DNA from: Octopus sinensis
Lineage: Eukaryota
Reading direction: 5' to 3'
Assembly: GCF_006345805.1 (NCBI RefSeq)
Contig: NC_043010.1
Span: forward strand, 61,380,001-61,444,000
DNA length: 64,000 nt
Below are positions 12,952 through 13,286 of this stretch, piece after piece. Under the pieces are notes generated by a model. That model saw only the letters and a list, made by a program, of their open reading frames with translations, searched no databases and had not been told where the DNA came from. A program made the translations under genes and the position numbers. The first letter of the stretch is position 1, and each line of letters starts with the position of its first letter.

Positions 12952-13286
12952 CTATTTGCTCTGTCTCAAAGTACATGGGAAGACACTGGGGGAATTAGTC
13001 CAACCTGTGCCCCAGGTAGGGGACATGGCAGGGAAACCTCTGGCCCAGGAATAGCTGTTTTCCCAGTTCTGAAGGGTCTGGTGACTGCATGTCGACGGGA
13101 TACTCAATGGCTGCAGGATCAGGGTGGGTGGGTTTGGCTGCTGAACCCCAACACCACCACCACCACCACCACCACCACCGCCACCATTGTTGCTGCCCCT
13201 TCCCATGTTACTAGGGTTGGCGATGGGGGAGAGCTGTGAAGCATGCGGGGTGGAAGGTGGTGCCGGAGTTGGGTGTTGCTGTTGTT

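What the first reader, a model, noticed from the sequence alone, without database searches (positions are those of the whole stretch)
12973..13059. Conserved C-terminal motif shared by both ZNFs: candidate new effector module
ZNF-A has NSYSWARGFPAMSPTWGTGWTNSPSVFPC and ZNF-B (45670-45762) has NSYCWSRGFPVTAWSDSTAVPTVPPGSVFPC. The motif NSYxWxRGFP...W...SVFPC is retained while all surrounding low-complexity sequence has diverged. Shared residues use different codons (TAT/TAC, AGA/CGT, GGT/GGC, CCT/CCC), which implies protein-level selection. Both proteins also keep an SPCC motif after the fingers. I recognise no KRAB, SCAN, BTB or ZAD domain here, so this may be a lineage-specific cofactor-recruiting motif for cephalopod ZNFs.
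Basis: partly seen in the sequence, partly recalled or inferred. Interest (0 to 1): 0.8.

Follow-up and report, generated by a model that had tools for sequence, protein, structure and literature searches.

The report
Conserved tail motif in cephalopod zinc-finger proteins
Two neighbouring octopus-type zinc-finger genes share a short tryptophan-rich peptide near their C-termini that also occurs in related genes of octopuses and a cuttlefish, matches no described domain, and probably serves as a docking site for a partner protein, though no function has been shown.

Summary
NSYSWARGFP…SVFPC (ZNF-A, 12973-13059, minus strand) and NSYCWSRGFP…SVFPC (ZNF-B, 45670-45762, plus strand) are present as described. 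The match is far beyond chance: 0 of 3000 composition-preserving shuffles reach it. Nine of 12 shared multi-codon residues use different codons, and synonymous sites are saturated.

It is not confined to these two genes. The same module occurs in ZNF-B orthologues on two Logan contigs. It also occurs in a third, many-fingered paralogue group: Octopus vulgaris/sinensis/bimaculoides 'zinc finger protein 2 homolog', a Sepia pharaonis 867-aa ORF and a Logan protein. In the ZNF-A and third-group genes (not the B lineage) it is longer, LHEMxQxWENxYxWxRGFP…WxNxPSVFPC, usually followed by [KR]QSK. All members also begin with MY[SP]xQ.

In every pair compared, the module has about 1.5-2.8 times fewer non-synonymous differences per site than the rest of the tail. 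It matches nothing in Pfam or the PDB. Two AlphaFold2 models are low-confidence and essentially unstructured, so it looks like a linear motif in a disordered tail rather than a folded domain.

The shared 'SPCC' is chance-level. The motif marks a small coleoid ZNF subfamily, not cephalopod ZNFs in general. Cofactor recruitment is plausible but untested. Interest is moderate.

The parts
12952..14820 (-). ZNF-A coding sequence (622 aa from ATG 14820, stop 12952-12954), single uninterrupted ORF
12973..13059 (-). ZNF-A motif as reported: NSYSWARGFPAMSPTWGTGWTNSPSVFPC
   Evidence: significance
12955..13065 (-). ZNF-A full module as defined by the family alignment: WENSYSWARGFP...W.N.PSVFPC plus terminal LRQSK (matches VKQSK of the third paralogue group)
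13843..14583 (-). ZNF-A array of nine C2H2 fingers; the first is degenerate (C-x2-C-x12-H-x8-H)
14806..14820 (-). ZNF-A N-terminal signature MYSDQ (family consensus MY[SP]xQ)
44338..45906 (+). ZNF-B coding sequence (522 aa plus stop), single uninterrupted ORF
45670..45762 (+). ZNF-B motif: NSYCWSRGFPVTAWSDSTAVPTVPPGSVFPC
   Evidence: significance
45763..45810 (+). B-lineage extension NGGIVGVHSSGVGVVC, conserved in the B orthologues L001 and L002
45886..45903 (+). B-lineage basic C-terminus HHKGKH (HHKGKP / HHKGKH in the orthologues)
44662..45402 (+). ZNF-B array of nine C2H2 fingers; the first is degenerate
44338..44352 (+). ZNF-B N-terminal signature MYSVQ

Best explanation
The motif is the core of a conserved linear peptide module of about 35-45 residues. 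It is rich in Trp, Tyr, Phe and Pro and lies in the otherwise fast-evolving, low-complexity and probably disordered C-terminal tail of a small subfamily of single-exon C2H2 zinc-finger proteins of coleoid cephalopods.

The subfamily has at least three paralogue lineages:
- A: the window's ZNF-A.
- B: ZNF-B plus two orthologues.
- C: the many-fingered group, comprising the Octopus 'zinc finger protein 2 homolog', a Sepia pharaonis 867-aa ORF and a Logan protein.

Its members are also marked by an N-terminal MY[SP]xQ. The A/C-type form, LHEMxQxWENxYxWxRGFP-(8-10)-WxNxPSVFPC-x(1-2)-[KR]QSK, looks ancestral. The B lineage kept only YxWx[RG][GS]F[PT] and PPGSVFPC, and added its own conserved extension.

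Shown: the module has been maintained by purifying selection on the protein since before the octopus/cuttlefish split. Inferred: because it does not appear to fold on its own, it most likely works as a docking peptide (SLiM/MoRF) that binds a partner protein, most plausibly a transcriptional co-regulator, and brings it to the sites bound by the finger array. I put about 0.9 on 'real, selected, undescribed module' and about 0.45-0.5 on the cofactor-docking mechanism.
For: - The sequence is present and its significance is established.
- Different codons and saturated dS rule out recent duplication or gene conversion.
- A full HMMER scan recovered a Sepia pharaonis protein (P0128) and a Logan ZNF-B-type tail (P0124).
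- Full ORFs carrying the module were recovered: L001, L002, L003, P0062 in O. vulgaris/sinensis, O. bimaculoides and P0085.
- In the family alignment the module is an island of identity inside tails that are otherwise 22-46% identical when forced into alignment.
- pN is about 1.5-2.8-fold lower in the module than in the rest of the tail in all six pairs.
- There is no Pfam or PDB match.
- AlphaFold2 gives pLDDT about 55 and no stable structure, which fits a linear motif.
- The ORF stays open through 160-300 low-complexity codons in seven loci, so the tail is coding.
Against: - No functional data of any kind exist.
- Conservation is uneven. In the B orthologues R, G and P of 'RGFP' change (GGFT, RSFT). 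One Logan contig (L002) has a 1-nt frameshift inside the module and SVFPR in place of SVFPC. O. vulgaris has SGYSC and P0085 has TPLPC in place of SVFPC.
- The module matches no known co-regulator motif: no WRPW, eh1, PxDLS, SNAG or NuRD-binding motif.
- dS is saturated in every comparison, so omega cannot be estimated.
- The AlphaFold2 alignments were very shallow (5-6 sequences), so a small fold cannot be excluded.
Confidence: 0.5

Rival explanations
1. The module is a targeting or turnover signal acting on the protein itself (non-classical nuclear import signal, degron, or an intramolecular element that packs on or regulates the finger array), not a co-regulator docking site.
For: It is a conserved short peptide in a disordered tail, followed by a short basic patch ([KR]QSK or HHKGK). 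No recognisable co-regulator motif is present. It lies at or near the C-terminus, 5 residues from the end in ZNF-A.
Against: There is no match to a PY-NLS or a classical basic NLS by eye. The distance to the C-terminus varies from 5 to about 60 residues, which argues against a C-degron. There is no evidence of contact with the fingers.
Confidence: 0.2
2. The module belongs to an older, wider (molluscan or bilaterian) ZNF family whose accessory motif is simply not in Pfam. It would then not be lineage-specific and might already be described under another name.
For: Sensitivity of the only exhaustive search was limited. The two-sequence profile did not report at E<1e-3 any protein carrying the divergent form found in P0062, a true family member. 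The word-indexed search is lossy. No non-cephalopod genome could be searched at the DNA level.
Against: The scan of 1.84 billion representatives, which include NCBI/UniRef eukaryotes, returned only cephalopod-type true hits. There is no Pfam or PDB match. Of the top 120 ZNF hits from all animals, only the two cephalopod-type proteins carry it.
Confidence: 0.12
3. Block 1 is a relic of a decayed tenth zinc finger (x-K-x-F turned into x-R-G-F), kept by slow decay rather than for a function of its own.
For: In P0085 a clearly degenerate finger reads ...NSSFFSRAFPIQP..., which resembles NNYLWSRGFPVPP of the module.
Against: The spacing of Y/W/F does not fit C-x2-C-x3-F-x5-L-x2-H. There is no zf-C2H2 hit on any tail even at E<=10. 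Neutral decay cannot explain retention across saturated synonymous distances while the flanks randomise.
Confidence: 0.05
4. The similarity is chance or low-complexity similarity, or it reflects a nucleotide-level element (repeat, RNA structure, antisense ORF).
For: The tails are strongly biased (polyQ, polyH, polyG, polyP). An antisense ORF (45604-46017, minus strand) overlaps the ZNF-B tail.
Against: 0 of 3000 shuffles reach the observed score. The blocks are only 69% identical at the nucleotide level, with mostly synonymous differences. No other copy exists in the window. No antisense ORF overlaps the ZNF-A motif. Independent recurrence in other species is documented.
Confidence: 0.01

Closest known systems
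Short co-regulator-recruiting peptide motifs of zinc-finger and other transcription factors (WRPW/WRPY and eh1 for Groucho/TLE; SNAG of Snail/Gfi; PxDLS for CtBP; the N-terminal MSRRKQ-type NuRD-binding motif of Sall/FOG/BCL11). Basis: established knowledge, not tested here beyond pattern scans.
   Same: A short conserved peptide in an otherwise unconserved, disordered region flanking a C2H2 array. It sits at or near a terminus, is aromatic-rich like WRPW and eh1, and is paired here with a motif at the extreme N-terminus, as SNAG and the NuRD motif are.
   Different: No sequence match to any of them. It is longer, with two blocks spanning 30-45 residues. The partner is unknown and no activity has been measured.
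Lineage-specific ZNF-associated domains (KRAB in tetrapods, ZAD in insects, FiNZ in cyprinid fish, SCAN, BTB). Basis: Pfam plus literature (PMC10547256).
   Same: A non-finger signature shared by a set of paralogous poly-ZNF genes in one animal lineage.
   Different: Those are N-terminal folded domains of about 40-120 residues that mark hundreds of genes. This one is C-terminal, apparently unfolded and marks only a few genes. Pfam finds none of those domains here.
Octopus 'zinc finger protein 2 homolog' / 'ZFP2' (XP_029644964.1, XP_036364992.1, CAI9733335.1, XP_014769006.1) and Sepia pharaonis CAE1144206.1 (labelled 'KRAB')
   Same: They carry the same C-terminal module and the same MY[SP]xQ start. 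They are true homologues of ZNF-A and ZNF-B.
   Different: They have 12-19 fingers rather than nine and are only 40-55% identical across fingers. Their names are automatic and say nothing about the module. The Sepia model is a 249-aa fragment of an 867-aa ORF and shows no KRAB domain.

Membership tests
KRAB / SCAN / BTB / ZAD zinc-finger-associated domains | Significant match to the Pfam model (PF01352, PF02023, PF00651, PF07776) | tested here: not met
   hmmscan of both full proteins at E<=1 returns only zinc-finger families plus low-complexity noise. The tails alone at E<=10 give nothing relevant.
Groucho/TLE-binding WRPW-type motif | [WFY]RP[WFY] tetrapeptide, usually C-terminal | tested here: not met
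   No pattern hit in any of the 7 family proteins. The module has W-x-R-[GA]-[FY]-P instead.
eh1, CtBP (PxDLS), SNAG and NuRD-binding N-terminal motifs | FxIxxIL; P[ILVM][DEN]L[STV]; N-terminal MPRSF...; N-terminal MSRRKQ... | tested here: not met
   No pattern hits. The N-terminus is MY[SP]xQ.
C2H2 zinc finger (module as a cryptic tenth finger) | C-x2-4-C-x12-H-x3-5-H spacing, or a zf-C2H2 profile match | tested here: not met
   No zf-C2H2 hit on the tails at E<=10. Only one conserved Cys and no conserved His lie in the module.
Autonomously folding protein domain of known structure | Confident predicted fold, or sequence match to a solved structure | tested here: not met
   AlphaFold2 mean pLDDT is 55.6 and 54.8, with pTM 0.17 and 0.11. 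The best E-value of the PDB profile search is 0.31, which is noise. The alignments were shallow, so this test is weak.
New cephalopod ZNF subfamily ('MYxQ ... WENxYxWxRGFP ... SVFPC') | C-terminal module plus N-terminal MY[SP]xQ flanking a C2H2 array in one uninterrupted ORF | tested here: met
   Met by ZNF-A, ZNF-B, L001, L003, L004/L005 (P0062), P0131 and L006 (P0085). L002 meets it apart from a frameshift.
Short linear motif under purifying selection | Lower non-synonymous divergence than the flanking disordered sequence, in orthologues and paralogues | tested here: met
   pN is 0.19-0.32 in the module against 0.34-0.58 in the rest of the tail, in six pairs. dS is saturated, so omega itself could not be estimated.
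Transcriptional effector (cofactor-recruiting) motif | Module-dependent transcriptional activity when tethered; a defined binding partner | not testable with these tools
   This needs reporter and interaction experiments.

The most novel reading that the evidence does not exclude
The MY[SP]xQ start and the WENxYxWxRGFP...SVFPC tail together define a previously undescribed, coleoid-restricted class of C2H2 transcription factors. This class would have its own dedicated effector peptide that recruits a specific co-regulator: a small-scale cephalopod counterpart of SNAG or WRPW-type modules. It would have arisen with, or just before, the 'coleoid expansion' of nervous-system-expressed ZNFs.
Probability: 0.3. 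Interest if true: 0.55.

Novelty: new variant of a known kind. Interest (0 to 1): 0.4.

Why it matters
Cephalopods have one of the largest C2H2 zinc-finger expansions among animals. Unlike tetrapod KRAB-ZNFs or insect ZAD-ZNFs, no effector module is known for these proteins, so how they act on transcription is open.

A conserved, selectable peptide shared by one ancient subfamily gives a concrete handle for finding at least one partner of cephalopod ZNFs. Possible routes are peptide pull-downs, tethering assays and structure prediction of complexes.

It also gives a sequence signature for classifying these genes and correcting their annotation. For example, the Sepia pharaonis 'KRAB' model is a truncated member without a KRAB domain. 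The motif does not mark the bulk of the expansion, so its reach is limited.

Tried and rejected
1. Full-length ZNF-B search. It was swamped by generic poly-ZNFs, mostly vertebrate KRAB-ZNFs, and was useless for orthology. Two family members (P0062, P0085) were later found by pattern among its 120 hits.
2. Word-indexed search with the two-motif alignment. It returned nothing. The index is lossy: P0124 shares 10 five-mers with the query yet was not retrieved, and P0128 was missed although its own sequence was in the query. These negatives carry no weight.
3. Exact look-ups of ZNF-A and ZNF-B. Neither is in the collection, so the source species could not be named. Interspersed repeats shared with O. 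sinensis/vulgaris at 80-88% point to an octopod.
4. Metagenome contig scan with the C-type module. It found no relatives.
5. Amphipathic-helix idea for LHEMxQxWENxYxW. One low-confidence AlphaFold2 model showed a helix. The second showed none, and the hydrophobic moment is not above shuffles. The idea was dropped.
6. Zinc-binding idea for the B-lineage C-x7-H-x8-C. It was rejected because L002 has Arg in place of the first Cys.
7. A class I SH3 ligand (RxxPxxP) is present only in C-type members, so it is not the shared function.
8. 'SPCC' as a shared motif is chance-level. A B-lineage S[PS]CC[AST]S.[FY]S[TS]H motif is nevertheless conserved among B orthologues.
9. Fold search was not run, because both models are too poor for meaningful matches.

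Full report
**1. The observation**

The window holds two uninterrupted ORFs that encode nine-finger C2H2 proteins.
- ZNF-A lies on the minus strand at 12952-14853. The likely start is the ATG at 14820, giving MYSDQ... and 622 aa.
- ZNF-B lies on the plus strand at 44338-45906 and encodes 522 aa.
- The two genes are head-to-head, about 29.5 kb apart.

The reported peptide of ZNF-A is obtained only from the minus strand of 12973-13059 (the plus strand gives unrelated sequence). The ZNF-B peptide is at 45670-45762. The finger arrays align without gaps at 65% identity. Pfam finds only zinc-finger families.

**2. Is it more than chance?**

The post-finger tails are heavily low-complexity. ZNF-A has a run of about 50 Gln codons plus polyH, polyG and polyP. 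Ordinary gapped scores are therefore inflated: 16 of 2000 shuffles reach the gapped score and 12 of 1000 reach the best-diagonal score.

A windowed test is decisive.

| Measure | Observed | Null | Shuffles reaching observed |
|---|---|---|---|
| Best 10-residue ungapped window | 52 | 29.1 +/- 3.3, maximum 46 | 0 of 3000 |
| Two co-linear blocks combined | 82 | maximum 67 | 0 of 3000 |

The shared 'SPCC' is not significant. 66% of shuffles share at least one 4-mer, and the two SPCCs sit at non-equivalent positions.

**3. Protein-level selection**

Of the 12 identical residues that have more than one codon, nine use different codons. Across the fingers, pS is 0.92, which is saturated, and dN is 0.27. 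In the 15 block codons pN is 0.083. The duplication is therefore old, and the motif was not kept by recent duplication or gene conversion.

**4. Relatives elsewhere**

The full-length search was swamped by generic ZNFs, and the word-indexed motif search returned nothing. The index later proved lossy.

The exhaustive HMMER scan of 1.84 billion representatives with the two-sequence profile gave eight hits at E<1e-3. Six are repetitive junk and two are true:
- P0128 is CAE1144206.1 from Acanthosepion (Sepia) pharaonis, labelled 'KRAB'. It carries ...LHEMSQRWENNYLWPRAFPMTPIPTTNWANMPSVFPC...
- P0124 is a Logan fragment with ...VPPGSVFPCNGGIVSIHGRGVGIVC...HHKGKP...

Fetching the DNA gave the following.
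- L001 (SRR27666069) holds a complete 633-aa ORF, a ZNF-B orthologue. It starts MYSIQ... and its module reads DRLNNDYAWAGGFTMASWGDGPAVANVPPGSVFPCNGGIV.
- L002 (ERR12374250) is a second B orthologue. It reads LNSTYDWARSFTMPT, then has a one-base frameshift, then ...PPGSVFPRNGSIV in the next frame. This may be an assembly error or a real lesion.
- L003 shows that the Sepia model is the tail of an 867-aa ORF with 19 fingers that starts MYPTQ....

Pattern scans of the 120 proteins found two more members:
- P0062, 'zinc finger protein 2 homolog' of O. vulgaris and O. sinensis (L004/L005), has YLHEMPQSWESNYLWSRGYPMPPLLGSSWPSVPSGYSCGVKQSK.
- P0085 (Logan SRR29271456, L006) has YLQDMSQSWENNYLWSRGFPVPPMSSSCWPNVPTPLPCSVKQSK.
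- O. bimaculoides XP_014769006.1 has the same module as O. vulgaris.

**5. Anatomy of the family**

The C-terminal alignment (A4) gives an A/C-type consensus of [LH]-[HQ]-[EDQ]-[MT]-x-Q-x-W-E-[NS]-x-Y-x-W-x-R-[GA]-[FY]-P-(8-10)-W-x-[NS]-x-P-[ST]-x-x-x-C. It is followed by [VL]-[KR]-Q-S-K in ZNF-A, P0062 and P0085.
- The B lineage lost the upstream half.
- It keeps Y-x-W-x-[RG]-[GS]-F-[PT] and PPGSVFP[CR].
- It has its own conserved extension (NGGIV.[VI]H..GVG[VI][VI]C) and its own terminus (HHKGK).
- Invariant across all six aligned sequences are the Tyr and the following Trp of block 1, one Pro of block 2 and the Cys.

All seven proteins begin with MY[SP]xQ. By finger similarity, A and B are sisters (65%), and the C group (12-19 fingers, 40-55% identity) is the outgroup. 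Because A keeps the C-type module, that form is probably ancestral.

In forced global alignments the module is an island. It is 45-64% identical, against 22-46% for the rest of the tail. Its pN is about 1.5- to 2.8-fold lower in all six pairs. dS is saturated in every pair, so omega could not be estimated.

**6. What it is not**

- There is no Pfam hit on any tail at E<=10.
- There is no PDB sequence match; the best E-value is 0.31.
- There is no WRPW, eh1, PxDLS, SNAG or NuRD-type motif.
- A class I SH3-like RxxPxxP exists only in C-type members.
- The window holds no further copy, and the metagenome contigs hold no relative.
- No antisense ORF is shared by the two motif regions.
- Two papers on cephalopod and metazoan ZNF expansions describe no non-finger motif for octopus ZNFs (PMC12513265; PMC10547256).

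**7. Structure**

AlphaFold2 on the ZNF-A tail (6-sequence alignment) gave mean pLDDT 55.6, with one weak helix over TLQNWENSYSWA. On the P0085 tail it gave pLDDT 54.8 and no secondary structure. The hydrophobic moment of the putative helix is not above shuffles.

The module therefore looks like a linear motif in a disordered tail, not a folded domain. The alignments were very shallow, so this conclusion is weak.

**8. Mechanism**

Shown: a conserved, selected, undescribed peptide module, paired with an N-terminal signature, in a small ZNF subfamily that predates the octopod/sepiid split.

Inferred: it is a docking peptide for a partner protein, most plausibly a co-regulator delivered to the finger array's DNA targets. 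The reasoning is by analogy with the WRPW, eh1, SNAG and NuRD-binding motifs, which is established knowledge rather than something tested here.

Rivals are a localisation, stability or intramolecular signal, membership of an older undescribed family, and a decayed finger. Chance is excluded.

**9. Verdict**

It is correct about selection and about the absence of a known domain. It is too broad in saying 'for cephalopod ZNFs' and too narrow in its motif boundaries. It is wrong to attach weight to SPCC, and the proposed function is unproven.

Novelty: an undescribed motif of a familiar kind. Interest: moderate.

Noticed in passing
window 14806-14820 (-) and 44338-44352 (+); L001 37-51; L002 52-66; L003 8147-8161; L004/L005 10001-10015; L006 64-78: Every family member starts with MY[SP]xQ, followed by an aromatic/Pro-rich stretch (MYSDQPIYP, MYSVQSMAFP, MYPVQPMYP ...).
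   Followed up: partly
window 13843-14583 (-) and 44662-45402 (+): Most recognition helices are almost uniform (Q-R/K-A/D-H-L-x-N/T/K). Under the canonical finger code (general knowledge) this predicts a purine-rich, AGA-like repeated triplet target. The first finger of both proteins is degenerate in the same way (C-x2-C-x12-H-x8-H).
   Followed up: no
L003 8147-10750 (Sepia pharaonis CAHIKZ030000040.1): The deposited protein CAE1144206.1, named 'KRAB', is only the last 249 residues of an uninterrupted 867-aa, 19-finger ORF. The precomputed Pfam hits on record for the 249-aa product show only zinc-finger families and no KRAB; the 867-aa ORF itself was not scanned. It is probably both mis-modelled and mis-named.
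   Followed up: partly
L002 1630-1650: The ZNF-B orthologue on Logan contig ERR12374250_1554541 has one extra base at the position of a Trp codon of the module, giving a stop and a frame shift. It also has SVFPR instead of SVFPC. This could be an assembly error, a polymorphism or a decaying copy. I left it unmended.
   Followed up: partly
L006, aa 120-145 of P0085: A decayed finger in the N-terminal part of P0085 reads NSSFFSRAFPIQP, which resembles block 1 of the module (NNYLWSRGFPVPP). This hints that block 1 could derive from a finger remnant. The Pfam scans do not support it.
   Followed up: partly
window 13148-13668 (-): The ZNF-A tail carries a run of about 50 Gln codons (mixed CAG/CAA), plus polyPro, polyGly and polyHis runs. 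ZNF-B instead has polyHis/polyGln/polyPro in its N-terminal region. Homopolymer content has moved between the two ends in the paralogues.
   Followed up: no
window 57480-57998 (-), 41746-42102 (-), 40628-41107 (+): Transposable-element remnants: a mariner-type transposase DDE fragment (PF01359, E 2e-23), a Mos1-type HTH fragment (PF17906) and a GIY-YIG nuclease fragment (PF01541). The last may come from a Penelope-like element; that attribution is from my own recollection and was not tested.
   Followed up: partly
window 9847-10170, 40952-41228, 51171-51427, 58841-59163; and 15571-15976, 18528-18926, 26575-27023: Two families of interspersed, SINE-like repeats are shared at about 72-89% identity with the Octopus sinensis and O. 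vulgaris loci L004/L005. This is the main evidence that the window comes from an octopod.
   Followed up: partly
window 20000-24000, also 290-916, 19380-19970, 42200-42990: Large AT-rich TA/CA-type microsatellite blocks (GC 16% over 20-24 kb, with strong GC skew) generate many spurious Y/I/C/M-rich ORFs.
   Followed up: no
window 53895-54932 (+): A 345-aa ORF with no Pfam match. It is not low-complexity and its nature is unknown.
   Followed up: partly
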